From assembly GCF_963853765.1 (NCBI RefSeq), contig NC_088855.1:22878001-22942000 (forward strand): a stretch of DNA of 64,000 nucleotides, read 5' to 3'. How positions within the stretch are numbered: the first letter of the stretch is position 1; each line of letters starts with the position of its first letter. The translations under genes were made by a program, and so were the position numbers. This DNA is from Magallana gigas. Taxonomy: Eukaryota. The notes beneath the pieces were generated by a model. That model saw only the letters and a program-made list of their open reading frames with translations. It searched no databases and had not been told where the DNA came from. This document shows, piece by piece, positions 4,470 to 48,378 of the stretch.

Positions 4470-7400
4470 ATGAACCGGGGGATTTTCCTCGTCCTTGTGG
4501 CTTTAGCTGTATACGGTACAGGTAGGTGATTCATAGTACCCAGCTCGTTTATTTTAAGGCGGTGTGGGACACCTGTCGATATAATGTGGATTAAAGTACA
4601 TTTTAATTAAAATAATTTCATCATTTTAGAATTTTCACATTTTACAATATTTTATTTTTAGGTAAGAATTATAAAAGACCCAGTGGAATTCGAACTCATG
4701 ACTGACAGATTCGTAGGTAACACTCTAAATCCACTGCGCTACACTGTTAGGTAGCAATTTCGGGAAAGGAAAAAAAATTAAAACTATACTTGATTTCATT
4801 GTTTATTTCGATATATTTATATCTACCGAGAATGATTCTCTCTATTTCATAGGGAAAGTTAATGTAAATTCATAGCTCTATAGAAACTTAAGAACTGAAA
4901 GCTACACGCCCCGTTTATCGATTGGTCGAAACCTACAGCAACTGAAACTGACAGGACTGAAATCTACACGCCCCATTTACCTACAGCGACCTAAGAAAAA
5001 TCACGGACTGCATGAAATATTTATGATGATGTCATACTCAAATTCCCATAGGAGACGATTTGGCTATTTCTTTTAGCTAACGTATTGATGTACATTAACA
5101 GTAATTTAGTTAATTTAACTTATATCATGCAATCAATTTATTAATTTGTTAAAAGACAGATGTAAGTATGAAAAATAAAATGCTCATTTTGATGATTCGT
5201 GCGGGTTATGAAGGTATACGTAGCGATCCCTGCAGAAAAAACTTTATATAACCCGCTAACGCGGATTATGTATATTTTCTGCAATGTCTCCACCTTCATA
5301 TCCCGCATGACTCACCAAAGAAAGCATTTTATTGTTCAGATAAAGTACGTCATAATATGGAGGTGTCCCATGAATCTGCACATCTCGTCAAAGTCGGCAC
5401 GAAAAACATTTGTAAAGGGGATCATTTAATTGCTTGTGAAAAGAAAACTCTGTATACAGTTACCTTAATCAAGTACCCCACGGAGTTCTCAAAGAGTTGA
5501 CAGCCGGTGACGTGTTCTCTTTTCATTTTCAAAACTTAACGGTATATAATTTTGAATTATTCTTTGTGCATTTATATCAAAAGCCCATGACAAAGCAATT
5601 TTCTGAGTTTTTTGACATTTTCGTTAGGCACAATTAAGAAGAAAACTTTAGAAAAATGTCAAACTTGTATAATTTTTGCATTTTAAGAATAAATGAAAAT
5701 AATGACAATTTTCTGTATAAATTCTTAGATGCCGGGAGACGGAAGCGAGATTTGACCCAGTTCGGTCATATGATCTATTCGTCCACTGGCCGTGACCCCT
5801 TTGAGTTCATCGACTATGGAAATTGGTGCGGTCTCGGCGGAAACGGAAGTGTGATAGACGCCATTGATGAGTATGTAATTGTATTGGTCAGTACCAATTT
5901 TTTAATTAAAAAACTGTGGGAAACGGGGACAAAGTATTAGATTGAAGCGCCCTCAAGGAGAATCCAGTCGATAATTATAGATATAGAATTGAGGATCTAG
6001 GAATCATTCTTTGACTTTAATTTTATAGGGATAAACACATATACCAAGTATGATTCCTTCCATTTCTTACGGAAACTTATAGTTAATTCATAGCTCTATA
6101 GAAACAGTCAGACTGAAATCTACACGCCCTGTTTATCAATTGATCGAAACCTACAGCGAACTAAGAAAAAATCCCGGACTGCACAAAATAATCATGATGA
6201 TGATGATGATGTCAGACTCAAAATGTCCACAGGAGACGATTTGGCTGTTTCTTGAAGCTTAAGTACTGATATACATTAACAGTAATTTAGTTATTTTAAC
6301 ACACTTCTTGCAATCAATTAATTACTAGTAATTTGTGTAAAGAAAGATGTATTATGTATTTTTTCTACAATGATGCCACCTTCATATCCAGCCTGAATCA
6401 AAATCAGGTTATTTTATTTTTCAATATTTTCTTGCAATCTTTATAAATTTTCAGATGCTGTTTTCATCATGATAATTGCTATGCCGTAATCATTGGAAGA
6501 CCAGCATGTGGAAGTGTTTACACCACCAAATACAACTTCAATATCAGCAAAGGGGAAATCGAGTGTCGTGAGTATACAGTCGTAATACATGTATATTAAT
6601 TTCATGTTTATATTCAATACTCTTAAAATGACAAATATAAGAAACATGTATGGATTGTATTAGATACCGAAATCCCCTGACTTAAATTTCGTGTATTCTA
6701 TGAATATTTATTATATAATTACCGCTACTTGCTGCATAAACATAAAGTAATCAAAGTGCGAAATTTATTCCTTGAAGGAGTTGAACTTTTCAAACCAGTG
6801 ACGGAAAATTTGAATCAAATCGTTCATGCACTGCCTAGCAAGTTGAAAAGGATCATAGCTAAATCAAAATCTTAATGAAAACAATTTTAGAGCTGATACA
6901 TGTATACATTTACTGAAAATACATAAAGTTTTGATTCTCCATTTTTACAAATATTTTCTACAAATTGCAGAATATAAGCAATTAACAGGTCTAGATTTTG
7001 ATTTTATCATCAAACACGTGCATTTAATTTACTTCATAAACAAATGAATAAATCGGTGCACACATTGATGTAACCCATCCAAATAATAAGTTTCTCCTGT
7101 AAATCCCCGCGCTTTAAGTGGCTTGGGGAAATTTAAGTACTTTGGATACAAGTTAAAAAGATAAAAAAATGTAAGTAAAACGCCATTTAATTAATATTAG
7201 ACAAGCCACTTTACACGTAGCATTATTAGAATCACTCTAAGAGTATTATGAGGTGGTCAGGGGTGATCAAATCTAAATTAAATACAGTCCGAGAGGCTTT
7301 ATGATATATTTGATCACGCCCGACCTTATTTGAGCATCACATCATATTCAAAGAATGATTTCTTATTACTTTTTTGTGTACTGCGTCATCAAAAAGTGGT

Positions 7401-7700
7401 GTATAGAGCCACCTTAAACAAAGACACTGGAGGAATATAAAATGGAGAATGTAATTATATAATCATCACTCTCTGGCATCATGGATAATGAAAAAGTCGA
7501 AATAAATCTTCTTCTTTTTTGTAGATGACGAACGTCCCTGTGAGAGGGCGCTGTGTAACTGTGACAGAAGGGCATCACTATGTTTCCATGCCAACCGTAA
7601 GGCCTACAACAGTACAAACAAAGGAATACTGGCGAAACTCATTTCAAAGTTATTAGAAGGCTTCTCCATAAAAAAAAGAATTCCAATTCAAGCAGAATGA
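4470..7700 (+). CDS. Secreted phospholipase A2 (group I/II-like fold), 160 aa, 4 coding exons
   Basis: Exons 4470-4521, 5729-5870, 6455-6567, 7525-7700 (483 nt, GT-AG, phases 1/2/1). Signal peptide MNRGIFLVLVALAVYGT; RRKR processing site before DLTQFGHMI; Ca-binding loop YGNWCGLGG; catalytic CCFHHDNC; catalytic Asp in CNCDRRA; 10 Cys in the mature domain. Confidence 0.93.
4558..4815. mobile_element. Truncated Kolobok-like non-autonomous element with tRNA-like core
   Basis: TTAA at 4554-4557, then GGCGGTGTGGGACAC, homologous along its length to the complete copy at 42518-42834. Reverse-strand A/B-box segment at ~4680-4750. Right end not found. Confidence 0.65.
4865..5165. repeat. Interspersed repeat, copy 1 (PLA2 coding intron 1)
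   Basis: TTCATAGCTCTATAGAAAC...CTGAAA(G/T)CTACACGCCC...GGAGACGATTTGGCT...ACATTAACAGTAATTTAG is shared with 6085-6360. Confidence 0.8.
6085..6360. repeat. Interspersed repeat, copy 2 (PLA2 coding intron 2)
   Basis: Direct-orientation homologue of 4865-5165. Confidence 0.8.
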
Positions 7701-8579: not shown

Positions 8580-8765
8580 AGAGATGTGTGTCCTCCGCGG
8601 ATCCAGAAAAAAAATTTCGGGGGGGGGGGGGTGGGGTTCCAAATCTATGTTTGCTAAGGGATCCAAGACATATTTTTCTTCATTTAACTATGTAAATTTA
8701 AGAAATTTGCATTTTCCAGGTGTGGGGGAGGGGTCCGGACCACCCCCTCCCGATCCACACATGTT
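8580..8765. mobile_element. Short MITE-like element
   Basis: Left end CGCGGATCCAG plus a poly-G run; right end poly-C plus GATCCACACATG, forming imperfect terminal inverted repeats. Confidence 0.45.
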
Positions 8766-9937
8766 AGGAATGCCGACAGGGATCTGTTTGCAGTCCTAGA
8801 CTTTGAACCGTCTCATCCTAAAATGGTTGCTCTTCTGTGTTACTATAATAACGGATGTTACTCGTGTATACAGATTAACATCTTCATCTCGCCAATGGTA
8901 TAAACCAATAAGCAAGGGTCTTGTACCTGGAAATATTCATTTTGAGGTCAATATATAGTTTGAGAATTAATCGATTTTATAAGTAAGTTTACTTAAATAA
9001 TTTTGACATTCCACTATAAATCTTGCGCCGAGAATAAAAGATATTTATTTCGAAATGGCTCATTTTTAAAAATCTTTTTTTTGTATTGTAATTGGCTTGA
9101 AAAAAAAATGAAAGGATATCAGGATTTGTCAATGGCCATATCTTTGAGTTAGAAATTATCTTTTAAAAATCTAATTATCAAAACCAGTGAATGTGTAATT
9201 GTCAGTATACGGTTTCAGGAGATTTTGGGCAAGCTCTTTAAAAAATCTGTATCATCATATTCATTCTCTTCTTGGTAAAGTTCAAATTTCACCCTCTGGT
9301 GTATTATCGAACTCTTTCGTAGTGCTAAATAACAACACTGTATAAATTCAGTGTAATATCTTGTGTTATACAACTCGCTTTGTTGGTTATGTCATCAAAG
9401 TTTGCCTTTCTTTCGTTTTGTATCTTCTTTTACTTAACACTTATACTCTTGTATTTTGCATTGCCACATTCTTTATGCTAAATTTTTGCAAAGCGGAATA
9501 TCTATACATGTATATAGAACATTTCATTTATTGGATTGTTTTTGGTCTAGTTTCCACGATGCACCACAGATCCCTTCCAATCACGATTTGCTGACAATGT
9601 TTCTGCAATCCATACTGGTCAGGTGTAGTTTTTTCTTGTTGTATTAACGAATTATTTAAAGATCTCCTACTTTTACCACACAAGAATGAAATGTCTGACA
9701 ACAGATTAGTTAGAATACAGTTGTAATACAACCGATCTTTTTAACAATTCCGTGTGTAAATAGCTAAGAGATATTTAACAATTCAATACCAATCAGTTAT
9801 TCTGATCAGTCCATTTAAGAAGCAGACTAGCTTTGATAAAGAGTGAGATTTTAAAGGTTTTCGATTTGGAAAAAAGTTGTGAGCAAGAAGTATCGTACTG
9901 AAAAAAAGTTAACCGGTTCTATTGGGGGAAAATTACA

Positions 9938-11167
9938 ATGATGGCAGTGCTAGGTATCGTTATTTCCATGCTTCTGTTACCGGGGCAGTCTTTTGGCGGT
10001 ACGTCGACGGACTACGACAACCTTTACAACACCATCTTGACAGGATACAACAAAGATGGCAGACCAGTACTGGACCAGGGCACTGCCATAAATGTCACGA
10101 TATCCTTCACCCTGATCACCATTGCCAACTTGGACGAAGTTACGAGCGAGATGATCACTGTCGGAAGCTTCACCATCGCTTGGAAAGACGAAAAACTCCG
10201 TTGGACTCCATCCTCGCACGGGAACACTTTAACGCTAACTATTGATGAGTCCGTGGTGTGGAAACCTTCAATGACTTTCCTTAACCCCATGTCAACCAAC
10301 GTGGGCCTTCTCGGCATGAAGCAGTCTAGAATTAAATATTTCGAAGATGGGTCCGCCTATTGGATGATTGCTGATCGGTATCAAACAACCTGTGATTTTG
10401 ACACCAGATATTTTCCTTTCGATGAGCAAACATGTGACATGAGAGTCATGGCTTGGGATTACTCTACACAGGAAGTTTTAATGTATCCAGAAAAAACTAC
10501 TGTCGACCTAAACCATTTCAGTGAAAACGGAGCTTGGGAGCTGGTGTCCACTGAGACCAGAACTGAGACTCTTTCGACCTTTTCTGTTGTCGTGTTTAGT
10601 CTGAAACTGAAGAGGCGGGCTATGTTTTTCGTTACCAATCTTCTGATCCCCGTGTTTACGATTTTGATGTTGAACACTTTGGTATTCATTTTGCCATCAG
10701 ACAGCGGTGAGCGCGTGGGCTACTCCATCACGTGTCTCCTAGCTTTGGCGGTTTTTCTTACTTATGTGTCAGAAGGTCTTCCGCAAGTTTCTAAACCTAT
10801 GCCGGTGATGGGGTACGTGTTGACCGTGTATTTACTTATCTCTGCATTAATTTGTGTGGAGACGATATTTATCTTGCGTTTGCACCATAAAGACGAGAAC
10901 GAACAAATGTCTCCTTTTTTCACAAAAATATACAATATTCTTACTTGTTCGACCTGTAAGAAAAGGTCAGGAGCTGTCGAAACATCCTCGTCGCACATCG
11001 ACTTAGAAAAAGTGAAGGAATTCAATGACGAAAAGAAACCAGAGCCATTGTCACTCACATGGAAGAAACTTTCATCCCGTTTGGACAAGATATGTTTCAT
11101 TAGCAACTTGTCTGTTGTAGTCTTTGTTGCTGTTATATTTTTTCTGCTTGTGACTGTGAAGTTGTAA
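9938..11167 (+). CDS. Intronless Cys-loop ligand-gated ion channel, nAChR-like non-alpha subunit (copy A), 409 aa
   Basis: Single ORF with signal peptide; Cys-loop CDFDTRYFPFDEQTC; WKP motif; four TM helices; M2 GERVGYSITCLLALAVFLT; short M3-M4 loop; no vicinal Cys pair in loop C. Confidence 0.96.
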   Translation: MMAVLGIVISMLLLPGQSFGGTSTDYDNLYNTILTGYNKDGRPVLDQGTAINVTISFTLITIANLDEVTSEMITVGSFTIAWKDEKLRWTPSSHGNTLTLTIDESVVWKPSMTFLNPMSTNVGLLGMKQSRIKYFEDGSAYWMIADRYQTTCDFDTRYFPFDEQTCDMRVMAWDYSTQEVLMYPEKTTVDLNHFSENGAWELVSTETRTETLSTFSVVVFSLKLKRRAMFFVTNLLIPVFTILMLNTLVFILPSDSGERVGYSITCLLALAVFLTYVSEGLPQVSKPMPVMGYVLTVYLLISALICVETIFILRLHHKDENEQMSPFFTKIYNILTCSTCKKRSGAVETSSSHIDLEKVKEFNDEKKPEPLSLTWKKLSSRLDKICFISNLSVVVFVAVIFFLLVTVKL

Positions 11168-11639
11168 GTGGGGAAATTCTATTATTTGACAATTTTACTC
11201 TTGATGCTTCTCTTAGTTCAATCCTGGGTATCAAAGGATGATCAAGCAATGTTAACCATTTCACAAATTAATAAGATATAGGTAAATCACCATTTCTAAT
11301 TAGTTCGCTTACAAAGCTTTTGTGAAAAGAATGATATTCCAGTACCTGGCAAATCAGAGTGTACAAAGAAGTCATCTGAAGGGCGGTGTTTATTTGACTA
11401 TTAATTAGACATCAATGCAGAAAACTAACATAAAAAATAGCAACACAGAGAAACGAAGATAAAACGGGTTTCCATAAAATAATGCATCGGATTTTATTGC
11501 AAGATACTTCTTATAAATGAAGATAGCTAGAGATTGATATCATGAACTACGTTTTTTTTTCTCTCTCTAAAAAATGTTACACATTGCAATATCGCATACA
11601 TTAGCATACAATGGTGTTAAAAGTTCACGATTTCTATTA

Positions 11640-11826
11640 AAGTACCAATCGCGATGGTTTTAATTTCACGCTGCTTAAAAATCAATTGATCAGAATATAA
11701 GCATTGAAACGTTTTTGAAAACTAATGATAGTATTCACGATGGGTTTAATTTCGCGGGAAAATATTTAATCGCATAATATACATAGTGAAATTAAAACCA
11801 TCGTGATTATTTGCCAATCTACAGTA
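11640..11826. mobile_element. Tc1/mariner-type MITE remnant
   Basis: GCGATGGTTTTAATTTCAC (~11650) is the inverse of GTGAAATTAAAACCATCG (~11786); right end is ...CTACAGTA. Confidence 0.45.
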
Positions 11827-12410
11827 TCAGATCCACACTGACCAAATTTTGATAGCAGTGAATACTTGGGGCTAGGATAGTATTGTAAATTGGTTGTGTT
11901 TTCATGGTTGTCAAACACCTTTGGTTCTTTTCAAGGTTAGATACAAACATTTTCAATTCGTTAAATGATAAAGTCTAAACGAGACAATTTTCATTTCAAT
12001 AATCATACAGACGGTATCGATTGGTGATATGATTGTTATGTAGGCATGACATCAACCAATATCATGTAATGTATTAAATAAAACAATTGCCTGTTCTGAA
12101 ATAAACTTTGACTAATTACTATGACTTTTTAATCATATTGGTCGGATCGCAATTTTCAGATTTGTTATTCCACTGTATTAACTTTCTTTTGTACTTCAGT
12201 CAACATTACATTTCTTTGAACTCAAATTGTTTTTGTGGTTTACATCTAAGTACATCTAGTTTTTACAAACTTAAGTTAAATGACGTTCTTTTTGACAAGC
12301 ATGGCTTGAATGTGATGTGTAAAATATTACAGCTAAAGATAGTTACTTAAAATATAAAGGATTTTTAAAAACCAAAATGCTCTAGATGAAATGATATTTT
12401 ATACTTTTAA

Positions 12411-12859
12411 GGTCAGACGACACGTTCCTCGAGATTCTTTTTTGTATCTCCTCGTAATAAAGAGTTCCAATAAAAAACATTAATTTTATAATTACTTTAA
12501 AAATGATCAAAATTTACTTGAATTTGGTTATGTGTGTACATGGTCGAGTGGTTAGAACCGTGGCCACTCACTGCCAGAAGCGTATAGGTTCTAGAAGTCG
12601 TGAGTTTAAATCCCCGCCCCGGCGGAGATATATTTCTTATTTAGTGAATTTCGATGTGCTGTAGATGTATTTATCTTTATATCAGCAATTCAAGTGTATT
12701 TTCAAGAAGATTATATAGGAAATTGCATACTCTAGTATTTTCCAGAAATGCTTGGTAAGGTACCCTAATTTTTTGCAAGAAAGCTTGTCAAAGTAGTAGT
12801 AAACCATTAAAAAATTCCTGGAAAAAGTTATCTAAAATTGAGAAACGTGTCGTCTGACC
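12411..12859. mobile_element. Kolobok-like TIR element (449 bp) with TTAA target duplication and internal tRNA-like cassette
   Basis: TTAA at 12407-12410 and 12860-12863. TIRs GGTCAGACGACACGTTCCTC / GAGAAACGTGTCGTCTGACC. Internal TGGTCGAGTGGTTAG (A box) and GTGAGTTTAAATCCC (B-box-like) at ~12541-12625. Confidence 0.8.
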
Positions 12860-13677
12860 TTAAGTACCATGCATTAGGCAAATTCTTGTTAAGAATTTCA
12901 ACATCCCATTTAAATCCGATATGTGAGGAATTGTCCCACAAATGGCGTAGGCAGAACACAAATCTTAAAGTCTGTTCACTGCAACTAAGCGTCTATGTTT
13001 TTTTCCATGATCCTTTGACAAACAATTTTAAAAAATCCAGTCGATGTTTTATTTGATTCTTGAAAAAGAAGAAGAAGTAAAAACTAGTCATGTCAGGAGG
13101 CGCAGTATGCGATGTAAAAAATTTCCAGTATTTTCGTCGTTGTTAAACAATTCACGTCGTTTACGATAATAATAACGTTTTATTTCCTAAAATGTATCGG
13201 GAAAAGTTCTCTGGATATGTAAAACAACAGTGATTGGTATTATTTTAGTTTACTATTTGTATTTGCTGCCGATCACTGAAAGGTTACATATTTTATATGT
13301 ATATGCGGTTGGAGATATATACATGTAATAGGTAAATAAGTCAAAGTTTTGTGGCTGAACTTTCTCTCAACTGATATCTGCTATTTACTTGGGGATTTAA
13401 CAAAGCCCATAGGTGCCAGCCAGTTAGGAAAATATTTCATCTTCGAGCTACCATCAGGGCAATCGGTATACGCCTATGGAAGAGCTTATTTATGAGTTCA
13501 AAGAAAAGAAAGTTTCAATACTGCTGGGAACCTCTATGATACTCATTGTAAATTATACAGTTTTAAAAAAAGTAATTAATTAAAATTATATAAAAACAAG
13601 TATTTATTGGGGTGACAGAGAACTTTTTAGAAGACTTTTAAAATAGCATGTCATTTCATTGTTTTTTAATCTGATTA

Positions 13678-13748
13678 AAAGCAGCCGTTCTGATACGCTA
13701 CCGCTCTCGAATCGTTCAAGAGCAGTAACGAATCAGAACGGCTAATTA
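13678..13748. repeat. Mini fold-back (29-bp arms) flanked by 10-bp direct repeats
   Basis: AGCCGTTCTGAT...GAA-TCG-TTC...ATCAGAACGGCT at 13683-13743; TAATCTGATT at 13668-13677 and 13749-13758. Confidence 0.7.
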
Positions 13749-14119
13749 TAATCTGATTGATTGTTTTTGAAGTATACCATTATCTGCCTTTACCCCTTTG
13801 GAATAGGAACCTTGTGTTAAGATCAACATACATGTATTTTCCCTTTTACATGATACTTTGTAGAGGAGAACACTGTGCATTAATGTACAATTTACCTTAT
13901 AACCTGTAGGTTTTTTTTTAGCAGATCCTATCTAAATATATCATGTTACACTTTAAAAAAATTACATATTGATATGTCAGCCCCAAGTATAGGTTAGACA
14001 TCAATTTCATGAAATAAAAAGTATGATATATTAACTTAAAATATAAACAAACTTAGATAAACCTTATGAAAAGAAGCAAAATTGTATATGTCACAATTAC
14101 GGCCCGCCAAATTCGCATC

Positions 14120-14520
14120 GACTGTTAATTATAGTTTACGAATTTTTCATCTGTAAAACCATATTTAAAGATTGTAAAACGGATACGAATGCAAATATAA
14201 GTTTTCTATCCATAAATAACGTTTACAATAGATGTTTTGCTGATAGATACAGATTCATATCTTTAAACTTTAATTTACATTCGTTAGCTTTGGTTAAGAG
14301 TTGTTAATCATAGTTTCACAATCGTGAAACTATATTTATCAGATAAACTATGTTTTGCAATCTCAAATGGTTGTCTTCAGTGTTAATTATATAGTTTTAC
14401 ACTTCTAAAACAGATGAATGTGTTAACTATGGTTTGCAGAAGTGAAATATAGATCGTTATAACTATAGTTTTCCGTCCGCAAACTACAGTTTACAGCCGA
14501 TAAACCTAGTTAATCGACTA
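14120..14520. repeat. Degenerate short-period AACTATAGTTT-type repeat tract
   Basis: Repeated AACTATAGTTT / TATAGTTTCAC / AACTATGGTTT motifs. Confidence 0.55.
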
Positions 14521-16676
14521 ATTCAACTGCATTTTGTAACAAGCATAATATTAGAGGCGATAAGAAATTGTTGTCAAATATACGATCAAAAAATCAAAAC
14601 TTTTTTTTAAAATACTCCTTTAATGTACCCACATTCAAAATGTTTGTCTTATACTTTTGCAGCACGAAAGTCTCATTTAAATGATTCATTCCACCTTAGA
14701 TTACTTTGCCAATATACTTCTCAAATTATTATTTATTAGTGACCAAAAGTATTTGCAAGTGTTTTAGAATAATCATGGATAACTGTTTTTATTTTACCAT
14801 CCCTTGAAAAGGCGATATAACTTTCTAAACATTTTTATTGCAACAATTTTATTGTATGATGTCGAATTTTGAAAGGGCGTTTCTTTGAAGGGAAAAAGCT
14901 TCTGGGTAAACTAAAATTTCCTAAACAAAGTTGTAAACAAAGTATGATAAAAATCTATATTTATTCTAGTAAAACTAGAAACATAAACTTTCTTTATAAA
15001 AATTTAATTGAAAAGAATTGCTTTAAAAAAGGAGCTCAATGTACTAAAGTTGTCCAAAATTATATTAAATATTGCATGAAATTAAATAGCGCATTTTACG
15101 GGAAGTGTGGAATCGTAGTAAAATGGCGTCGACTGCGTTTGAGGCGACTTGTGTAGCACCTCTTTCCTTAAGAGAAGGAGCGGTAACAAATACAATTTTT
15201 ATAAAGATCTGAACTATCTCCGATCCTCAGCAATGTTCGATAACTCTAAATTATCCAATTTTTTTTTCGTATCATAAATTTGCCTTTTAAATAGACAAAT
15301 TTAATTAGCACTGTACTGTTAATACTACCCGTTGCTATTCAATGTACTGTTTGGCTTTGTGGATTCACGGCGACCTACTACTTAAATGGATAGGTATTTG
15401 AGCCACCTTTGCACCAGATTAAACCTTTTTTTTTCTAATTTGATCTCAACTTGTATGTTTATTCCATTGCATGTACATGTATATCTATTGTGGTCAAAGT
15501 TGCAATAAATTCGTAAAATTTTGGATACCATAAACAAATTTCTTTTTGTCTTATTTCATTTATAAAGTTTGAAGGATAAATAACACATTTTTATGATGAA
15601 AAAAATACTTTCAAACTAAGGATCGGAGAATCTTAAAGCACTTTCTAAAGCAACATAATTGCTTAGAAAATTCAAATGCATTTTTTGATCTAGTAGTCAA
15701 ACAAAATACAATACTATTTTTTTTATAGTATAATTACACGAGTATGATGACAACTAAGTGGAAAAATGAACCGACGAAAAACAATTAGTCGAATGCTGAA
15801 CGACACATTCGACATTATGTATTGAAGTTGTTTGGAATCGCCAGATCGTTTGTTCTTAGGCAATATTTCATCAACTAGAAAAGCATAGTGAATACGCATG
15901 ATCATCATGGATGTTTTGCTTGGGTTTATTTCCCATTTAACGTGGGATGATCTCAAAGAAGAAACTGGTTGTCCCGAAAATTGGTGATTTTCAGTAGTCG
16001 TTGGTAATTTCTTATGTTCTTTATCATCTACTAGTATTGGCTGTTTAGTATTGCTTAGACCCGATAACTTAGAATGCTTATTGAGGTTTATGATTGCACA
16101 AAATGCAACCGTTGCTATTTATTTTGTATCTAGCAAAAGTAAATAATAACCTTGCTTTTTCTTTAACCCTTTCACATTCATGTACAATGTACACGGACTT
16201 CTGTGCGCTGCGAGAGGTTTAAAACAGTTTTGATATGAAATATCCATTTTGGTAGGCATGGATTTGAATATCAAGCTAGAAAACAAACACTTCTTGAAAT
16301 AAATGATATTGTAGTTTTCCAATATCCCGTATACATATTCAATGCACATTAATCCGCTAATTATGTAATTATTTGACCCAAAAATGACAAAGGGAAAAGC
16401 GTGACAAAAGATTAAATAGCCAAAATCGTCTTTACATTGTATTTTTTTTAAAAACGTCTACTATCATTGAATATCTGAATACATTCTAGGGCAATTTGAT
16501 CAGCCTATTAAGACTTAATGAAAACATGTTAACTTTTCACTTTAAATTTTGAAACATAAACTAGCCCGTACCATCCTTTGTTGCATTACAAATACAGAGA
16601 GATAGAGAACCAGACGAGTTTTCTTTTTCTACTCGTTTTGAAAGTAGGAAAATAGGTCTTCATCAAGAGAAAAAAA

Positions 16677-17906
16677 ATGAAGCCCGTGCTGTTTGTGGTT
16701 TTCCATATAATCCTGTTACCAAATCAGTCTCTTGGCTGGAATTTGACGGAGTACAACAACGTTTACAATGCCGTCTTGTCCGGATACAACAAGGATGCAA
16801 GACCAATCATGGACCAGACCAAAACCATAAATGCCACGTTAGACTTTTATCTGAGAACAATCGCTAACCTTGACGAAGTTTCCAGCGAGTTGGTGACCGT
16901 TGGTCTCTTCACAATCATATGGAGAGACGAAGTAATCACCTGGAACCCATGGTCATACGGCGGCACGGTATCGGTAAACATCGACGAATCTCTGGTGTGG
17001 AAACCATCTATGACACTCCTTAATCCAATGTTTACTAATGTTGGTCTGCTTGGCTTCAAGCAGTCTAAAATACAATATTTCTACGATGGACTCGCTTACT
17101 GGAACATAGCTGATCGGTATCAAACAACATGTGACTTTGATACAACATATTTCCCTTTTGACAAACAAACCTGTGAAATAAAAATCATGGCTTGGGACTA
17201 CACTACCCAGGTAGTCATGATGTATCCGTTAGTCTCAGTTGTCAATTTGACATATTTCACTGAAAACGGAGCCTGGGAGTTGCTGTCAACAGAGACCAGA
17301 TCTGAAACTCTGTCCTACTACTCCGTCGTAGTATTCAGTCTAAACTTGAAGAGGCGGGCTTTGTTTTTCGTTACCAATCTTCTGATCCCCGTGTTCACAA
17401 TGTTGATTTTGAACACATTAGTTTTCATTTTGCCACCAAACAGCGGCGAACGTGTGGGCTACTCCATCACGTGTCTCCTAGCTTTAGCGGTTTTTCTTAC
17501 TCTTGTATCAGAAGGTCTTCCGCAAGTTTCTAAACCTATGCCAGTGATTGGATATGTGTTGACAGTTTATTTAGTTATCTCTGCGTTAATTTGTGTCGAG
17601 ACAATATATATTTTGCGCCTTCATTTCCGAGAAGAAAATGAAAAAATTGCATCATTTTATGTTAAAATCTACAGATTATTTACTTGTTCTTTCCGTACTT
17701 CCGGCAACAAACGGACTGGAACTGTGAGAAACTTTTCATCAAACGTCGACTTAGAAGACATCAAAGACCCAGAAAAATCGGAGGCTGCACCCTTGACATG
17801 GAAGATTCTGGCATGCTGTTTAGACCGAATTTGCTTTCTAAGCAACCTGTCTATTGTTGTCTTAGTGGCTATTGTGTTTTTCGTGATCGTCAATGTGATG
17901 TCTTAA
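16677..17906 (+). CDS. Intronless Cys-loop ligand-gated ion channel, nAChR-like non-alpha subunit (copy B), 409 aa
   Basis: Single ORF colinear with copy A; Cys-loop CDFDTTYFPFDKQTC; M2 GERVGYSITCLLALAVFLTLVSE; no vicinal Cys pair. Confidence 0.96.
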   Translation: MKPVLFVVFHIILLPNQSLGWNLTEYNNVYNAVLSGYNKDARPIMDQTKTINATLDFYLRTIANLDEVSSELVTVGLFTIIWRDEVITWNPWSYGGTVSVNIDESLVWKPSMTLLNPMFTNVGLLGFKQSKIQYFYDGLAYWNIADRYQTTCDFDTTYFPFDKQTCEIKIMAWDYTTQVVMMYPLVSVVNLTYFTENGAWELLSTETRSETLSYYSVVVFSLNLKRRALFFVTNLLIPVFTMLILNTLVFILPPNSGERVGYSITCLLALAVFLTLVSEGLPQVSKPMPVIGYVLTVYLVISALICVETIYILRLHFREENEKIASFYVKIYRLFTCSFRTSGNKRTGTVRNFSSNVDLEDIKDPEKSEAAPLTWKILACCLDRICFLSNLSIVVLVAIVFFVIVNVMS

Positions 17907-18346
17907 TTAGGCTAAAAAATTTGGACACGTACTTTTCTTTTAAATTTCTACACGTTTATAATAATCATAAAATCGTGAGTTGGACTGAATTATTTTTTAA
18001 TTTGCTCACTTCAATATCCAAACATGAAAGAGAAAGAGTTTACTTTGGAATACTTATTCATTTAACCAATCTAATTACTAAGTATATAAGAAATAAAGGC
18101 AAGGTAAGCAAAAGTTAATACATTTATAGACATATTAGTCTAAAACGTTAGAATTACAATCGAAAGTGAATAGTTCTAATTTCATAAATTAAACATTACA
18201 GGGTGATGGATATATAACAAACACTAAATGTGTCAGAAGAAGGACAATATTCAAAGATGTTTTGAAAACTTTTCAAAAAATTTCTAAGACGAGAAAATTT
18301 CAATGCCAAAAAATGACGTTTATCAATAAATCAGGTCATGATTCGG

Positions 18347-21959: not shown

Positions 21960-23780
21960 GTATATCAAGAAGTAACTCAAACTAAACTCCCTTCAACAAA
22001 CGACCACCGACTGTTTGTAACAGCAGACTCCGTAACAAATATCACATGACACACCTTCTCTTAAGAGGCAAGCAGAAATGCTTGCATCCAAAACGTGAAA
22101 CTTTGAAATATTTCAGATATCGGTCTTAAAACTACTGCTTTTCAACTACAACTATGTACACAAAAGATTAAAGATGTGGGCATTTACCTCATTTTACCAT
22201 ATCCGGACAATGTATCCTTGCAACTACACTTGCAAACAGTGCCTAAACCAGACATCCACCATAACTTCGTAAGATTTGCTGAGTCTTAATGTTGAGCTAA
22301 TATTTTCGTGTCATCGTTCTTTTCCCACTAACAATTCTAGCAACGTCTATTTTCCCTTTCCCATTTACACAACAATTAAAAATAATCATATCCTAAAACA
22401 ACACACAAAAAACAACACTTACATACAACATCAATCCTATACCAGACAACTACACCATTAAAGCATGCAATCTCACAACATTTAGTTTACAACATCAATA
22501 TTTAAGGTAAACTAGTTAGTATTCTTAGTATTCTAAAACATGCGGAACAACATGACTAAACACAGATTATTCCAGATTTGAGTTTGTCCTGTCACCATCA
22601 TCAACAATAGGGTATGTACAACACTTCAAATTTGGAACTATCTATACATCAAACTAAACCATCACCAATCACAACAACGAAAACGACATCGAGATACAAC
22701 AAACCAAGTTAAACAATTTATGTTCGCAGTTAATTCCGTCACCATAACAACAACTAACACACAACAACATCGAGATCGATTAACCCAGTACAACAACTAA
22801 TGTTAATGCTAGTAGTTAGTTCCGTCACCGCCACAACTATCACAACAACAACATTAGAATACAACAAACCCAGTACAACAAATAATGTTAATGCTTGTTA
22901 GTTCCATCACCGCCACAACAGCTATCACAACAACAACATTAGAATACAACAAACCCAGTACAACAAATAATGTTAATGCTTGTTAGTTCCATCACCGCCA
23001 CAACAGCTATCACAACAACAACATTAGAATACAACAAACCCAGTACAACAGCTAATGTTAACATTTCCACCACCATCACAACAGGAACAACATCAAAATA
23101 CAGAAACCCAGTACAACAATTAATGTTAATGCTAGAAATTAGTTCCGTCACCTTTACAACAGTTATCACAGCAAGACACATTAAGATACAACAAACCCAG
23201 TACAACAAATAATGTCAATGCTGGTTGTCAGTTCCATCACCATCACAACAGCAACCACACAAACAACATCAGAATACATAAAACCTTGAACAACAATAAA
23301 AGTTAACAGTAAATTCCGTCACCATCATAACATATATCACAACAACAACAAAGCTAACAACAACAGAATCACTTTGGCTAAATTATTCACTGGAAAAGTT
23401 TAAATGTTCTTTTAACCTTTATTCCCAAACAACGTTCGTACTTTGTAAGCCATTATTTTTTGTTTATTTTTAAAGTTATGCTTGGTGATACAATGAAAAC
23501 CAATGTTTCTGAGGAAATTATATGTATTAACAGCAAAACAGGCAAACAGTGACCTAAATAAACAACAACACATCTAGTTACCACCCCACCCCCCGGTAAC
23601 AACAAACAACACTAATCCATCACCAAGACAACAAACAATAATTACCCCGCCATGACAACAAACAACACTACCTTTTACCGTAACAACAAAGTGCACTCAA
23701 AAACATTTACTACTACAACATCAATAACTTAAACAACGATAACATACATCCCTTTTACAACCTACTCTACTTAATTATTT
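21960..23780 (+). repeat. Decayed Thr-rich (ACA/AAC-rich) mucin-like region with an ~85-bp tandem repeat core at ~22620-23400
   Basis: TTAGAATACAACAAACCCAGTACAAC recurs at 22854, 22939 and 23024 (period 85). Translates in patches as TTTTTLEYNKPSTT...SSITATTAIT, but is interrupted by frameshifts and stops. Confidence 0.75.
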
Positions 23781-24299
23781 TAACCGATCTATTGCCTACA
23801 GGGAAAAATACTGATATGACTAACGAGTTTTAAAAACTTCATTATAAATCAATAAGAAATAATAATTATCATAATTACTATACAAGGAGAGCATATGATA
23901 TTTGTAAGGAGCACTTTGACTAGAACACAAAGGGAAGATGAACAGCAAATACTTAGTATGCTACGACATGACCATATTTATGAAGAATCATTTCAAAATG
24001 TCGCTGATAATGAATGAAAAAAGATGCGCACAAAAGCAAAATAAGCTCTACAAGGAATTCTCTGGCAATTCGATCAATCCCACCTAGGAATTGCCTTTCC
24101 TTCCAATCTCAAGCATAAAGTACATGTATTACAAATATAATTTTTCCGATCGAGCGGTACATGAGACGCGACCCCATACGTTGTTCTTCTAGTGTTTGGC
24201 ACTTGACTGGTTTCGTGGCAAGAACCAGTTCGATTTGTTACTCTACCACTGACTGGTCGTTGATTTGTTATGGTTCATCCATTGTTCATCTATTTCATG

Positions 24300-38500: not shown

Positions 38501-41500
38501 AGGCTTGGGTGCTGAATCTGAGCCATAGGTTTCGGATGCTGAAGGAGGTTACGGTTTTTAGAGCTGGTTAAAGTTTTGGTTGCAGGTGCCCTCTGATGAT
38601 TATATCTTAGTTACTACTTGTCCTAACTTCACCAAACTTCCATGGATGGTGCATCTTATGATACTGATGCACCTGACAGGCTTGAATGCCGAGTCTGAGC
38701 CATAGGTTTCAGATGCTGGATATGGTTAAGTTTTTTGGAACAGGTCACATGTTTAATAGATAATAGTACTATTTCAGACTTGCAAAGTTGATTAAACTGT
38801 TATATGAATGAATCACAGAGGAAGCTTCAGATGCAGAACTTGATCTCCATTATCAAGGATGCTAAAAAATATATCTTAGTTATTACAGGTCCTAACTTCA
38901 CCAAACTTGAACGGATGGTGTGTCTTATGATACAGATGCACCTGACAGGCATGGATGTTGAATCTGAGCCATAGGTTGCGGATGCTGGAGCAGGTTAAGG
39001 TTTTAATTGCTAGTGCCCTCTGATGATGATATCTTAGTTATTACTGGTCTGAACTTCACCAAACTTGCATGTAGATGCGTCTTATGTATACTGATGCACC
39101 TGACAGGCTTGAATGCTGAATCTGAGCCATAGGTTTCGGATGCTGGATGAGGTTTAGTTTTTTTGGAACAGGTCACATCGTTGATTTAACTATATTATAA
39201 ATGAAACGCAGAGGTTGCTTCAAATGCAGAGCCTGATCTCCATTATCAAGGATGCTAATGAAATTTCCTACCTCACTCAAACCAGCTCGAAAGATAGATG
39301 TGTTTGTTGATAAATGATATAACATGATTCCTATGATATAGTATTGTATGGTATGAAACATTATTGTTTAATATGATACAATATAATATCATATGTAATA
39401 TTATAAAAAGTTATATGATACGATATGATATTGTATCTATTTTTTTTGATATTTTATTTTATGATATTGTATCATGATATCGTTATGTAAAGTATTGTAT
39501 ATTATGATACAATATTGTATAATATTGTATTGTATTATTAATTTATTATTTTATCACATGATACTATTACATAAGATATTGCAAAATATAATATTGTATC
39601 CTATGATACAATATTGTATATTCTATAATATTGTATCATACAATATTGTATAAAAAAACTATATGACATTAGTTTCTGTAATATAGAATTATATCACATG
39701 AAATTGTATAATATGATACTGTAATATTATATAATATCATATCATACGATATTGTATAATATGATATTGGTTAATTATAAGATATATTATCACATCATAT
39801 GAAATTGTATTGTATGATATTGTAAAATATATAATTGTATCATATGATAAATATGTATAATATAATAATGTATTATATAATATTTAAATTTTAATATTCA
39901 CATAATATTGTATCATTTGATATGATACAATGTTGTATCAAATTATATTGTATCATATGATACAATATCATATTATGTATCAAAAATGATACATTATCAT
40001 ACAATATCATAATATATTATACAATCTAATATCATATGTTTCAATGTTATGATGTATTATGTAATATGATATTGTAATATAATACTATATTGTTTTATAT
40101 ATTATGATATTGTATTATTTGATCAAATACAATAACTTATAACACAATACAATGTCATATCATACCTTACAATATCATATCTCATCATTGTTTATTATGG
40201 TATTTTATTGTATTATATGATATATGTATCATAAATGTTGTAAATATGATAGGATGCAATATTTAATTTTATATTATTGTATTGAGTAACATATGAACAT
40301 ATGATTATCATACAATTTTTTAACAGATGATATATGATGTTTTGTCAAAACAGAATCCATGAATATCGAAGATCATAAAGTATGATTTTCATTTAATATG
40401 ATAAAGGTGGTCTCATAAGGTGAAGTCTCATAAGGGTGATGTCTCGTCTCGGTGAGCTTTGTAATCTGTGATTACCTATGTTTAATACATGTATTTATGT
40501 CAAAATATCGTGAATATTAAAATTGCTAATGATTGTAAATCAAACTATGAAAGGTAGTCATCGAATTTCAGAAAATGATCATGATTTATATACACATGTA
40601 ACAAAATTTATCGTGTTGTTTTGTCAGCCAATAATCAAGTTCTGACATCCTACATGGGACAAGTGAGGTCACCAAATTTTCCAAATGGCTACCTTCAAAA
40701 TGGGGATGTCTACACGTGGGTCATTAAAAACAACGAGTACTCCAAGATTTTGGTGGTGTTTGATGATTGGCACATCTCACCATTCAGTGGGGAGGTCTAT
40801 GTAAGTATCCATTCAGTGGGGCTGTATATGTAAGTCACCATTCAGTGGGGAGGTCTATGTAAGTATCCATACAATGGGGAGGTCTATGTAAGTCACCATT
40901 TAGTGGGGAGGTCTATGAAAGTATCCATTCAGTGGGGAGGTCTGTGTAAGTCACCATTCAGTGGGGAGGTCTGTGTAAGTCACCATTCAGTGAGGAGGTC
41001 TATGTAAGTCACCGTTCAGTGGGGAGGTCTGTGTAAGTCACCATTCAGTGGGGAGGTATGTGTAAGTCACCATTCAGTGGGGAGGTATGTGTATGTCACC
41101 ATTCAGTAAGGAGGTCTGTGTAAGTCACCATTCAGTGGGGCTGTATATGTAAGTCACCATTCTGTGGGGAGGTCTGTGTAAGTCACCATTCAGTGGAGAG
41201 GTATGTGTATGTCACCATACAGTGGGGAGGTCTATGTAAATCACCGTTCAGTGAGGAGGTATGTGTAAATCACCTTTCAGTGGGAGGTCTTTGTAAGTCA
41301 CTGTTCAGTGGGGAGGAATGTGTAAGTCACCATTCAGTGGGGAGGTCTGTGTAAGTTACTATTCAGTGAGGAGATCTATGTAAGTTACCATTCAGTAAGG
41401 ATTTATGTGTAAGTCCCGTTCAGTGGGGAGGTCTATGTAAGTCACCGTTCAGTGGTCACTGTTCAGTGGGGAGGTATGTGTAAGTCACCATTCAGTGGGG

Positions 41501-47500: not shown

Positions 47501-48378
47501 CTCCTCCACCAAGACCGAAAAGTAACATCAGACAAGAGCTGGAGAGAAAGTTACAGGAAGATCAAATAAATCCAACTAACATACGAAGGAATTTGAATTC
47601 GGATAAGCCAGGACAGATGTCAGACAACAAGAGAAATACTAATTACAGGGAGAGTCAAAGCTTTCCTGAGAGTCCTTCAAGACATGGATCCTCTTCGTTC
47701 CATCCGAAGGCTGCAGAATCAAACAAAGATGAGCAGCACTGGAAGGAGGAAAATAAAAGAAGATCTAAAGGTGATTTGAGAAACAGAGCATCTGACAGCA
47801 GCTCAAAAGGACTACTCTTTAGTGAAGACCATTACACAGAGGGAGAAAATAGGGGCATTCTCAACCAGGCATTCAAAGACTTTGAAAGAAATTCACAACA
47901 TTCCCCACCCAGGACAAACTCAGCCAGTCTTGCCAACCTGCCTTCTTCTCTGGATAAATGGACGGATGATCGGAGAGAAGGGATGGCCATGTCTCTTCAG
48001 CATTTACCTACGACTCACTGCGTGGCCTCAAATAATATCCAAGCTGCCAGATCAGCCCAGGACCTTTCGCATAGAATGTCAACAGCCAATCAACCAAACA
48101 CAAACATCCCCCAACACCTCCAACCATCGGATCGACCCATGTCGCTCTCGGTGGGAAATCTACCCAATCGTTCAAACGCTGGAGAGAATAGGAGGGAGAG
48201 GGTGAGACCCGCTGGTGATTCCCAACGATCGGTGTCACTAGGCGATTTGAACCGGCGACTTAACAGCCAGACCGCTCGACGGCAAACTCATTCCCATGCA
48301 GACTTGTCCAACATTCAAGAAGAGAGAGGTGCTGACTCCATTGTTTTTGCATGTGAGAGTGAAGATGTTTTTGTTTGA
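35551..48378 (+). CDS. Type I membrane protein: signal peptide, divergent Cys-rich CUB-like domain, two CUB domains, LDLa, TM, long disordered tail (NETO/LEV-10/LRP10-12-like architecture), 957 aa, 13 coding exons
   Basis: Exons 35551-35569, 36010-36054, 36419-36647, 37532-37701, 40628-40800, 42240-42402 (alternative in-phase acceptor 42222), 43048-43077, 43919-44080, 44513-44713, 45312-45431, 45971-46171, 46673-46767, 47113-48378 (2874 nt). CUB motifs GQVRSPNFPNGY...YTWVI...GFKFTY and CG...YDCTWLI...GFYIRY; LDLa CNRRGMFYCNTGRCIPAELKCDRFNHCEDNSDESNDNC; TM VSVIVPLVISVFLLVILCVLFFLI; two PPTY motifs. Confidence 0.88.
36290..36350. mobile_element. Right-end fragment of the Kolobok-like family seen at 42518-42834
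   Basis: ...GTGTCCCATACCACC followed by TTAA, matching the right TIR of the complete copy. Confidence 0.6.
36762..37108. mobile_element. Kolobok-like TIR element (347 bp) with TTAA duplication and tRNA-like cassette
   Basis: TTAA at 36758-36761 and 37109-37112; TIRs GGTGGCTCACTACA / TGTAGTGAGGTACC; minus-strand GTAGCTCAGTGGTTAAAG...GATCATGAGTTGGAATCC at ~36935-37000. Confidence 0.78.
37180..37390. mobile_element. Tc1/mariner-type MITE
   Basis: TA-CTGT...ACAG-TA ends with ~33-bp TIRs (TACTGTGGAAT...GTGGGGGTCA / TGGTCCCCCAC...ATTCAACAGTA). Confidence 0.75.
38126..40483 (+). mobile_element. Helentron-associated HINE-type element with (GGCGTC)n, ~165-175-bp internal tandem repeats and a ~1-kb AT-rich simple-sequence block
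   Basis: 5' TTTTTAGCTCACCGAGAC subTIR; GGCGTC microsatellite at ~38174-38215; repeats at 38220-39180; 3' CTCGGTGAGC plus the short palindrome GTAATC-TGT-GATTAC and a T-rich end. Confidence 0.8.
40777..42027 (+). repeat. 29-bp minisatellite (~43 units), consensus TCACCATTCAGTGGGGAGGTCTATGTAAG
   Basis: Direct tandem array with no unique spacers. The first unit spans the last 24 nt of the exon ending at 40800 and its GTAAG donor. Confidence 0.97.
42518..42834. mobile_element. Kolobok-like TIR element (317 bp) with TTAA duplication and tRNA-like cassette
   Basis: TTAA at 42514-42517 and 42835-42838; TIRs (A)GTGGTATGGGACA / TGTCCCATACCACC; minus-strand ATAGCGCAGTGAGTCAG...GTCATGAGTTCGAATCCCAC at ~42662-42730. 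Confidence 0.8.
43095..43687 (+). mobile_element. HINE-type element with Cg170-related monomers
   Basis: 5' TTTTATTAGCTCACCTGA; 3' GGCGAGTGATGTGGCCCATTGGCCTCTTGTT; internal ACCATGACCC...GGGGCCCCAAA monomers. Confidence 0.75.

What the first reader, a model, noticed from the sequence alone, without database searches (positions are those of the whole stretch)
9938..17906. Tandem intronless nAChR-like channels with an intact cation pore but a remodelled ligand site: candidate chemosensory receptors
Seen: both 409-aa subunits keep the Cys-loop, the M2 -1' Glu (GER), 9' Leu and 20' Glu, which point to a gated cation channel. Both lack the loop C vicinal Cys, and loop C is shortened (STETRTETLSTFSVV / STETRSETLSYYSVV). 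Loop A has no Tyr (WKPSMTFLNP / WKPSMTLLNP) and the loop D Trp position appears to be Phe; only the loop B Trp (AWDY) remains. Known: bivalves have large intronless nAChR expansions, and octopus chemotactile receptors are intronless, tandem nAChR derivatives that lost ACh-binding residues and sense environmental compounds. Inference: these may be an independently derived bivalve chemosensory or settlement-cue channel family rather than ACh receptors.
Basis: partly seen in the sequence, partly recalled or inferred. Interest (0 to 1): 0.7.

Follow-up and report, generated by a model that had tools for sequence, protein, structure and literature searches.

The report
Catalogued oyster orphan nicotinic-like channel pair
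Two neighbouring single-exon Pacific-oyster genes encode intact, expressed, cation-channel subunits of the nicotinic receptor family that lack a normal acetylcholine site, but they are already-catalogued members of the known bivalve receptor expansion and nothing found here points specifically to a chemosensory role.

Summary
Two intact 409-aa ORFs (9938-11167 and 16677-17906, + strand, 67% identical) encode complete Cys-loop channel subunits. Both keep the Cys-loop, -1' Glu, 9' Leu, 20' Glu and the loop B Trp. Both lack the loop C Cys pair and the Tyr190 equivalent, and both have Leu at the loop A Tyr position. One correction: the loop D Trp position is Ser/Leu, not Phe.

The window is Magallana (Crassostrea) gigas. 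The genes are OYG10008612 and OYG10008611 in Jiao et al. 2019, which already describes the intronless, tandem bivalve nAChR expansion and its degenerate ACh sites.

They belong to a small oyster-only subfamily under purifying selection (dN/dS 0.1-0.2). Binding loops are no more variable than the rest of the ectodomain. Structure-based identity to cephalopod chemotactile receptors (23%) is no higher than to vertebrate nAChRs or 5-HT3A (24-26%).

Gene 1 is transcribed unspliced. Published RPKM peaks at gastrula-trochophore, is about 1 in pediveligers, and in adults is highest in labial palp and gill. Gene 2 peaks in D-larvae and is silent at settlement.

A non-canonical ligand site is supported. 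A chemosensory role is untested, and a settlement-cue role is disfavoured. The scan already judged a similar pair elsewhere in this genome ordinary (s1-403200).

The parts
9938..11167 (+). Gene 1 coding sequence (409 aa), single exon. It corresponds to OYG10008612 and the UniProt K1Q996 core, a non-alpha nAChR-like subunit.
   Evidence: ORF; Pfam LBD and TM domains; identical to K1Q996 from residue 19 onward; unique Cys-loop string match to OYG10008612.
9830..11680 (+). Transcribed span of gene 1 seen as one colinear, unspliced RNA contig. It gives a 5'UTR of at least 108 nt and a 3'UTR of at least 513 nt, and the 3' end runs into a repeat.
   Evidence: X1 record 2 (1850 nt, one mismatch). Unique flanks 8840-9759 and 11968-12335 are silent in X1. 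Stranded polyA reads in X21 have the first mate on the - strand only, meaning + strand RNA.
10391..10435 (+). Gene 1 Cys-loop (residues 152-166, C-x13-C with FPFD).
   Evidence: lowest entropy region of the ectodomain, 0.29.
10544..10594 (+). Gene 1 truncated loop C hairpin (residues 203-219). It has no Cys-Cys pair and no Tyr190 equivalent, and Phe stands at the Tyr198 position.
   Evidence: Alignments; AF2 model shows a tight beta9-beta10 hairpin, strands 200-212 and 215-226.
10703..10783 (+). Gene 1 M2 pore helix with flanks (residues 256-282): -1' Glu, 9' Leu, 20' Glu.
   Evidence: entropy 0.33.
11164..11169 (+). GTAAGT splice-donor consensus overlapping the gene 1 stop codon. It is used in one public RNA contig (L001).
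   Evidence: L001 leaves the genome exactly after 11163 and continues with the sequence of the exon at 7525.
11168..16676 (.). 5.5-kb intergenic spacer between the paralogues. It has no detectable similarity to the flanks of the other copy and contains dispersed repeats.
   Evidence: Self-BLAST; repeat-level depth at 11600-11967 and 12336-12500.
16677..17906 (+). Gene 2 coding sequence (409 aa), single exon. It corresponds to OYG10008611, the tandem paralogue.
   Evidence: Its Cys-loop string matches OYG10008611 and the ID is adjacent to 8612. A 90%-identical colinear contig L002 covers 16294-17947.
17130..17174 (+). Gene 2 Cys-loop (residues 152-166).
17283..17333 (+). Gene 2 truncated loop C (residues 203-219), with Tyr at the Tyr198 position.
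17442..17522 (+). Gene 2 M2 pore region (residues 256-282): -1' Glu, 9' Leu, 20' Glu.

Best explanation
These are two functional, old tandem paralogues in the Pacific oyster Magallana gigas (gene 1 = OYG10008612, gene 2 = OYG10008611). They belong to a small oyster-specific subfamily within the already described bivalve expansion of single-exon nicotinic-receptor-like genes.

Each encodes a complete non-alpha subunit of a pentameric cation channel: signal peptide, ligand-binding domain with Cys-loop, M1-M4, a cation-type pore (-1' Glu, 9' Leu gate, 20' Glu) and conserved ECD-TMD coupling elements.

Both the principal and the complementary face have lost most of the ACh aromatic box, and loop C is a short hairpin. 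Pentamers built only from these subunits therefore cannot bind ACh in the canonical way. They act either as non-binding partners of alpha subunits or as receptors for an unidentified ligand.

Shown here: gene integrity, purifying selection, transcription, family placement and site degeneration. Inferred: cation selectivity, pentamer formation and orphan-ligand status.
For: - Intact ORFs and domains.
- Residue mapping. Invariant gating residues across 69 homologues: W82, W108, C152, D162, C166, R226, P238, G257, E258, L268, P282.
- AF2 model with pLDDT 84 and a full pLGIC fold; best structural matches are muscle, alpha7 and alpha4beta2 nAChRs at Z 30-32.
- dN/dS is 0.22 between the paralogues (ECD 0.19, TMD 0.15) and 0.10 between gene 2 and a 90%-identical orthologue.
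- The genes sit in a 100%-supported oyster-only clade of 27 rows containing Saccostrea, Ostrea and Magallana sequences, with every other bivalve hit below 40% identity.
- Gene 1 RNA contigs are restricted to the gene, with sense-stranded polyA reads.
- Identity with K1Q996 and with the OYG IDs.
- Published stage- and organ-specific expression.
- The expansion, intron loss, tandem arrays and incomplete ACh sites are all described in PMC6896357.
Against: - No functional data exist for these subunits.
- Expression is low (at most 10 RPKM). Gene 2 is below 1 RPKM in all adult organs sampled.
- Cation selectivity and assembly are inferred from motifs only.
- Assignment of OYG10008611 to gene 2 rests on the Cys-loop string plus ID adjacency. 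A third M. gigas paralogue (P0013) has the same Cys-loop string.
Confidence: 0.8

Rival explanations
1. One reading: an independently derived oyster chemosensory or settlement-cue channel family, functionally convergent with cephalopod chemotactile receptors. It would be gated by external compounds rather than ACh.
For: - The ACh site is degenerate while the pore is intact.
- The genes are single-exon and tandem, like CRs.
- Gene 1's adult expression is highest in labial palp (6.5 RPKM), gill (2.8) and mantle (1.2), and is zero in muscle and haemocytes.
- The literature accepts that divergent molluscan nAChR clades may have moved to other ligands (PMC13174522; PMC10338036).
Against: - The degenerate site is the default state of the whole bivalve expansion sampled.
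- The subfamily is small: three Cys-loop strings of this type in the C. gigas catalogue.
- Selection is purifying, and binding-loop entropy (0.42-0.97) is about equal to the ECD mean of 0.84.
- There is no pediveliger peak, and gene 2 is silent from P2 onward.
- Gene 1 peaks at gastrula-trochophore.
- Labial-palp-high expression is common among oyster nAChRs, and ChAT also peaks in that tissue.
- Structure-based identity to CRT1/CRB1 is 23%, no higher than the 24-26% to vertebrate nAChRs and 5-HT3A.
Confidence: 0.12
2. Accessory (non-ligand-binding) subunits of ACh-gated heteropentamers. They would co-assemble with oyster alpha subunits that supply the binding sites, and would tune conductance, trafficking or desensitisation, as vertebrate beta1 does in muscle receptors.
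For: - They are non-alpha type with fully conserved pore and coupling elements.
- The top PDB sequence hits include beta1, beta2 and delta chains as well as alpha chains.
- Oysters have 33 alpha-type genes available as partners.
- Gene 1's highest adult tissue, labial palp, is also where ChAT is highest.
Against: - Gene 1 peaks before the nervous system forms.
- Typical complementary subunits keep the loop D Trp, which is lost here.
- No partner has been identified.
Confidence: 0.3
3. Non-neuronal epithelial or ciliary signalling channel. The subunits would act in ciliated cells (embryonic ciliary bands, gill, palp, mantle), responding to an endogenous paracrine ligand to control ciliary activity or early development.
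For: - Gene 1 RPKM switches on at the rotary-movement and free-swimming stages (0.37, then 2.2). It peaks in trochophore (9.6).
- In adults it is found in the ciliated organs sampled and not in muscle or haemocytes.
- Jiao et al. note pre-nervous expression of some nAChRs and gill-dominated expression overall.
Against: The argument is purely correlative and rests on bulk RNA. There are no cell-type data, and gene 2 has a different pattern (late D-larva).
Confidence: 0.2
4. Decaying retrogene copies without function.
For: Expression is low. Jiao et al. report more silent genes among intron-poor nAChRs.
Against: - Both ORFs are intact although dS between them is about 0.95.
- dN/dS is 0.1-0.2.
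- Orthologues are conserved across Ostreidae.
- Transcription is regulated by stage.
Confidence: 0.03

Closest known systems
Bivalve intronless, tandem nAChR expansion (Jiao et al. 2019, BMC Genomics 20:937, PMC6896357)
   Same: These are the very genes in that catalogue (OYG10008612 and OYG10008611). They have a single-exon CDS, form a two-gene tandem array, are non-alpha, have an incomplete ACh site, and show stage- and organ-specific low expression.
   Different: Nothing categorical differs. This report adds residue-level mapping, subfamily delimitation (oyster-only clade), selection estimates and transcript structure.
Cephalopod chemotactile receptors CRT1 and CRB1 (PDB 9e6b, 8eiz)
   Same: They are nAChR-derived, intronless and clustered, have lost ACh-coordinating residues, and keep a cation pore.
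   Different: The oyster proteins are no closer to them than to vertebrate nAChRs (23% versus 24-26% structure-based identity, Z 23 versus 30-32). The oyster subfamily is small and conserved, whereas CRs are a large clade with positively selected pocket residues. No sensory-cell expression or ligand data exist for the oyster genes.
Alvinella pompejana Alpo4 orphan nAChR-like receptor (PDB 8bx5; PMC10338036)
   Same: It is a lophotrochozoan nAChR-like subunit without the loop C Cys pair. It does not respond to ACh or 5-HT, and its ligand is unknown. It is a structural match (Z 25.4, 21% identity).
   Different: Alpo4 keeps the aromatic cage (F103, W159, Y199, Y205, W65). The oyster subunits keep only the loop B Trp and a Phe/Tyr at the 198 position.
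Vertebrate non-alpha nAChR subunits (beta1, beta2, delta, epsilon)
   Same: They have no loop C Cys pair and an intact cation pore. They are the best PDB sequence and structure matches together with alpha chains.
   Different: Vertebrate complementary subunits retain the loop D Trp and have long intracellular loops and multi-exon genes. In the oyster genes the loop D Trp is lost, the M3-M4 loop is only about 56 residues, and the CDS is a single exon.

Membership tests
Cationic Cys-loop pentameric ligand-gated channel (nAChR/5-HT3 branch) | Neur_chan_LBD plus Neur_chan_memb domains and four TM helices | tested here: met
   Pfam E 3e-42 and 3e-21 for gene 1, and 4e-37 and 2e-18 for gene 2. AF2 helices at 228-250, 258-278, 290-316 and 375-408.
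Cationic Cys-loop pentameric ligand-gated channel (nAChR/5-HT3 branch) | Cys-loop C-x13-C with FPFD | tested here: met
   C152 and C166 are invariant across 69 homologues.
Cationic Cys-loop pentameric ligand-gated channel (nAChR/5-HT3 branch) | Cation-type pore: -1' Glu, no Pro-Ala-Arg motif, 9' Leu, outer-ring acidic 20' | tested here: met
   GER at -2' to 0', L9' and E20' in both genes. Selectivity itself was not measured.
Alpha-type (agonist-binding) nAChR subunit | Vicinal Cys-Cys at the tip of loop C | tested here: not met
   It is deleted together with Tyr190. Loop C is 6 residues shorter than in Drosophila alpha1 or human alpha4.
Alpha-type (agonist-binding) nAChR subunit | Aromatic box: Tyr93, Trp149, Tyr190 and Tyr198, plus the complementary Trp55 | tested here: not met
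   The residues are Leu, Trp, gap, Phe/Tyr and Ser/Leu respectively.
Bivalve intronless/tandem nAChR expansion (Jiao 2019) | Single-exon CDS in a tandem array in a bivalve genome | tested here: met
   Uninterrupted ORFs 5.5 kb apart and a colinear RNA contig.
Bivalve intronless/tandem nAChR expansion (Jiao 2019) | Listed in the published C. gigas catalogue | tested here: met
   Unique Cys-loop string matches to OYG10008612 and OYG10008611, which have adjacent IDs. K1Q996 identity.
Cephalopod chemotactile receptors (CRs) | Membership of the CR clade in a phylogeny | tested here: inconclusive
   No tool returned CR sequences as usable ids, so they could not be placed in the tree. As a proxy, structure-based identity is 23% to CRT1/CRB1 versus 24-26% to vertebrate nAChRs and 5-HT3A. 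No CR appears among the 60 best PDB sequence hits.
Cephalopod chemotactile receptors (CRs) | Loss of ACh-coordinating residues with a retained channel | tested here: met
   The feature is also met by most of the bivalve expansion, so it does not discriminate.
Cephalopod chemotactile receptors (CRs) | Pocket residues under diversifying selection within an expanded clade | tested here: not met
   Pairwise ECD dN/dS is 0.08-0.19. Loop entropies are not above the ECD mean. The subfamily is small. Codon site models were not run.
Cephalopod chemotactile receptors (CRs) | Insensitive to ACh and gated by poorly soluble environmental compounds | not testable with these tools
   Needs electrophysiology.
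Cephalopod chemotactile receptors (CRs) | Enriched in chemosensory epithelium | tested here: inconclusive
   Bulk RPKM for gene 1: labial palp 6.5, gill 2.8, mantle 1.2. There is no cell-level resolution, and palp samples also carry the highest ChAT.

The most novel reading that the evidence does not exclude
The oyster-only subfamility represented by these two genes forms orphan cation channels gated by a non-cholinergic ligand. The ligand could be external (a waterborne or particle-borne cue sensed by palp, gill or larval ciliated epithelia) or a novel endogenous transmitter. That would be a second, independent conversion of nicotinic receptors into a different kind of sensor within molluscs.
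Probability: 0.15. Interest if true: 0.65.

Novelty: already known. Interest (0 to 1): 0.22.

Why it matters
If a non-cholinergic ligand were found, these genes would give a tractable, small, conserved entry point into the function of the hundreds of orphan nicotinic-like channels in bivalves. That question has been open since the expansion was described. They would also provide a convergent counterpart to octopus taste-by-touch receptors. As it stands, the locus is an ordinary, already catalogued example. Its main value is as a clean candidate pair for expression and electrophysiology: intact, expressed, conserved across oysters, with known developmental windows.

Tried and rejected
- Other copies in the window: I looked for further nAChR-like copies or fragments and found none (tblastn).
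- Duplication unit: I looked for flanking similarity that would define one. Similarity is confined to the CDS.
- Placing the genes with cephalopod CRs in a tree: no tool returned CR sequences as usable ids. The word search gave no cephalopod hits among its 120 listed. The PDB tables show only the best 60 and 50 rows, without CRs. Only the VIA-align wide search listed CRT1 and CRB1, so the comparison is structural and by identity, not phylogenetic.
- Paper search by accession (K1Q996 and the XP ids) found nothing.
- The long K1Q996 N-terminal extension is rejected as real: it maps to a dispersed repeat at 8707-8897.
- P0004, an apparent third 'intermediate' paralogue, is rejected. It is a clean chimera of gene 2 (N-terminal part) and gene 1 (C-terminal part), switching in the near-identical M1-M2 region. 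It is most likely an assembly artefact.
- The L001 junction (donor at 11164 joined to the exon at 7525) was sought in four runs and not seen. It remains unexplained.
- Tissue labels of the coded public runs were not available, so tissue expression rests on the published table.

Full report
**What is there.** The window holds two uninterrupted 409-codon ORFs on the + strand, at 9938-11167 (gene 1) and 16677-17906 (gene 2). Their products are 67% identical. Each matches Pfam Neur_chan_LBD and Neur_chan_memb far above threshold. A tblastn of both proteins against the whole window finds no further copies or fragments. At DNA level the two loci resemble each other only inside the CDS (74% over about 1.2 kb), and the flanks and the 5.5-kb spacer are unrelated. 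Only one other ORF over 400 aa exists in the 64 kb, and it is an unrelated low-complexity protein.

I used the HMMER alignment to human alpha4 and a MAFFT alignment containing Drosophila, Ostrinia and Limulus alpha1 as canonical references.
- Confirmed: Cys-loop C152-x13-C166 with FPFD; -1' Glu in GER; 9' Leu; 20' Glu.
- Confirmed: loop A Tyr93 replaced by Leu in both genes, and loop B Trp149 retained.
- Confirmed: loop C is six residues shorter than in alpha subunits. The Cys-Cys pair and Tyr190 fall in the deletion. The Tyr198 position is Phe in gene 1 and Tyr in gene 2.
- Corrected: the loop D Trp55 column carries Ser in gene 1 and Leu in gene 2. It is invariant in the subfamily and alternates with the variable positions of that strand.

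Gating elements are invariant across 69 homologues: pre-M1 Arg226, M2-M3 Pro282, Cys-loop Asp162, and Gly257-Glu258. An AlphaFold2 model built on that alignment (pLDDT 84) shows the complete fold. Loop C forms a tight hairpin, and the M3-M4 loop of roughly 56 residues is largely disordered.

**Identity of the organism and the genes.** The 90% cluster of gene 1 contains Crassostrea angulata RefSeq proteins and UniProt K1Q996 of Magallana gigas. From residue 19 onward gene 1 is identical to K1Q996. The extra N-terminus of that old gene model maps to a dispersed repeat at 8707-8897 and is not real.

Supplementary Figure S2 of Jiao et al. 2019 lists the Cys-loop of every C. gigas nAChR. The 15-residue strings of gene 1 and gene 2 each occur exactly once, under the adjacent IDs OYG10008612 and OYG10008611. 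A third M. gigas paralogue (P0013) shares gene 2's string, so the gene 2 assignment also leans on ID adjacency. These are therefore catalogued genes.

That paper already reports:
- the massive bivalve expansion, with 132 genes in C. gigas;
- 44 intronless genes, and 55% of genes in tandem arrays, including sixteen two-gene arrays;
- only 33 alpha-type genes, of which 13 have a complete principal site;
- the suggestion that LBD diversity may support other ligands.

A 2026 preprint adds that a 'CR-like' clade reaches bivalves. It also proposes that pocket changes in divergent molluscan clades may reflect independent shifts in ligand specificity (PMC13174522).

**Family placement.** In a tree of 82 proteins (IQ-TREE, LG+C20, quick search), the two genes fall in a 100%-supported clade of 27 rows on a long stem. 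The named rows in that clade are all oysters (Saccostrea, Ostrea, Magallana), and the rest are unnamed assemblies. Every other bivalve hit is below 40% identical. Gene 1 and gene 2 each have their own closer relatives (82-87% and 94%), so the duplication is old. dS between them is about 0.95. The degenerate aromatic box is not special to this pair. Nearly all 75 rows of the bivalve expansion sampled lack Trp55, Tyr93, Tyr190 and the Cys pair, while all keep -1' Glu and 9' Leu.

**Selection.** Nei-Gojobori dN/dS values are as follows:
- 0.22 between the paralogues overall: ectodomain 0.19, M1-M3 0.15.
- 0.10 between gene 2 and a 90%-identical colinear contig (L002): ectodomain 0.08.

Across 21 full-length clade members, entropy in the binding loops is not above the ectodomain mean of 0.84:

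| Loop | A | B | C | D | E | F |
|---|---|---|---|---|---|---|
| Entropy | 0.42 | 0.97 | 0.86 | 0.75 | 0.79 | 0.92 |

This is the signature of conserved function, not of a rapidly diversifying chemoreceptor pocket. Octopus CR pocket residues, by contrast, are under positive selection (10.1101/2025.03.03.641191). Codon site models were not run.

**Relation to cephalopod chemotactile receptors.** CR sequences could not be brought into the tree. An exhaustive structural comparison against about 48,000 PDB representatives gave these matches:

| Target | Z | Structure-based identity |
|---|---|---|
| Muscle nAChR, alpha7, beta2 | 30-32 | 24-26% |
| 5-HT3A | 28.7 | 26% |
| Alpo4 | 25.4 | 21% |
| Squid CRB1 | 23.4 | 23% |
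| Octopus CRT1 | 22.7 | 23% |

There is therefore no special affinity to CRs.

**Expression.** Three public RNA runs of one study (X1, X8, X13) hold gene 1; X1 and X13 were laid on the window.
- In X1 a single 1850-nt contig is colinear with 9830-11680. The unique flanks are silent.
- Stranded polyA reads of another study (X21) lie in the orientation expected for + strand RNA.
- Gene 1 is therefore transcribed as an unspliced mRNA.

Published RPKM values from Jiao et al. Table S1 are:
- Gene 1, development: absent until the rotary-movement stage (0.37). It rises through free-swimming (2.2) and gastrula (7.2) to trochophore T2 (9.6), then falls to about 1 from umbo larva through pediveliger, spat and juvenile.
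- Gene 1, adults: labial palp 6.5, gill 2.8, mantle 1.2, digestive gland 0.85, adductor muscle 0, haemocytes 0.
- Gene 2: peaks at late D-larva (D6, 4.1), is 0 at P2, spat and juvenile, and does not reach 1 RPKM in any adult organ.

Neither gene is enriched at the competent pediveliger stage, which speaks against a settlement-cue receptor. The palp sample also has the highest ChAT, so the pattern does not discriminate sensory from cholinergic or neural use. Onset coinciding with first ciliary movement, together with adult expression in ciliated organs, suggests a non-neuronal epithelial role. That is inference only.

**Conclusion.** The genes are functional, conserved, expressed non-alpha nAChR-like cation-channel subunits with no canonical ACh site on either face. 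They are already catalogued members of a published expansion in which this state is the norm.

Whether they are accessory subunits of cholinergic heteromers (about 0.3), epithelial or developmental channels for an endogenous ligand (about 0.2), or external-cue sensors (about 0.12) cannot be settled in silico. The available selection, family-size and stage-expression data lean away from the chemosensory and settlement reading. An earlier follow-up in this scan reached the same verdict for a similar pair elsewhere in this genome (s1-403200). That is not independent evidence.

**Limits.** The large representative search was not used. No referred steps.

Noticed in passing
window 7525-7697 (+), acceptor AG at 7523-7524: This is the terminal exon of a secretory phospholipase A2-like gene, with a C-x-C-D...C-F motif. 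It gives a weak Pfam Phospholip_A2_1 hit to the profile's C-terminal end (E 4e-4, below the gathering score). A polypyrimidine tract and AG precede it. One RNA contig in X13 joins an unseen upstream exon at 7526.
   Followed up: partly
window 11163/11164 joined to 7525; locus L001 1320-1349: One public contig (L001, of unrecorded library type; it reads as spliced RNA) leaves gene 1 exactly at the GTAAGT donor overlapping its stop codon. It continues with the PLA2-like exon that lies 3.6 kb UPSTREAM in this assembly (28 of 30 bases match). The encoded protein is unchanged (TTA TGA). Possible causes are a back-splice or circular RNA from read-through transcription, a haplotype with a different gene order, or an RT artefact. 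The junction was not seen in the four runs laid.
   Followed up: partly
protein P0004 (Logan contig) versus window genes: P0004 is a perfect mosaic. Residues 1 to about 255 equal gene 2 and residues from about 260 to 409 equal gene 1, with the switch in the near-identical M1-M2 region. It is probably a de Bruijn assembly chimera, but an unequal-crossover hybrid allele is not excluded.
   Followed up: partly
window 10625-10891 versus 17364-17630 (M1-M3 codons): Synonymous divergence between the paralogues is much lower in M1-M3 (dS 0.48) than in the ectodomain (1.13) or the ICD plus M4 (1.58). This hints at past gene conversion or extra constraint on this stretch.
   Followed up: no
window 7184-7551, 8656-8839, 11600-11967, 12336-12500: These are dispersed repeats with hundreds- to thousands-fold summed contig depth in a probable genomic DNA run (library type not on record) and in RNA runs. 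The 8707-8897 repeat was wrongly incorporated as an N-terminal extension in the old K1Q996 gene model.
   Followed up: partly
window 47128-48378 (+): A 416-aa ORF encoding a Ser/Arg/Asn/Pro-rich, apparently disordered protein with no Pfam family. Its function is unknown.
   Followed up: no
window 22001-24000 and 40001-42000: Strong local GC-skew excursions (-0.38 and +0.27). The second coincides with the minisatellite noted by another first-stage finding (s1-394930).
   Followed up: no
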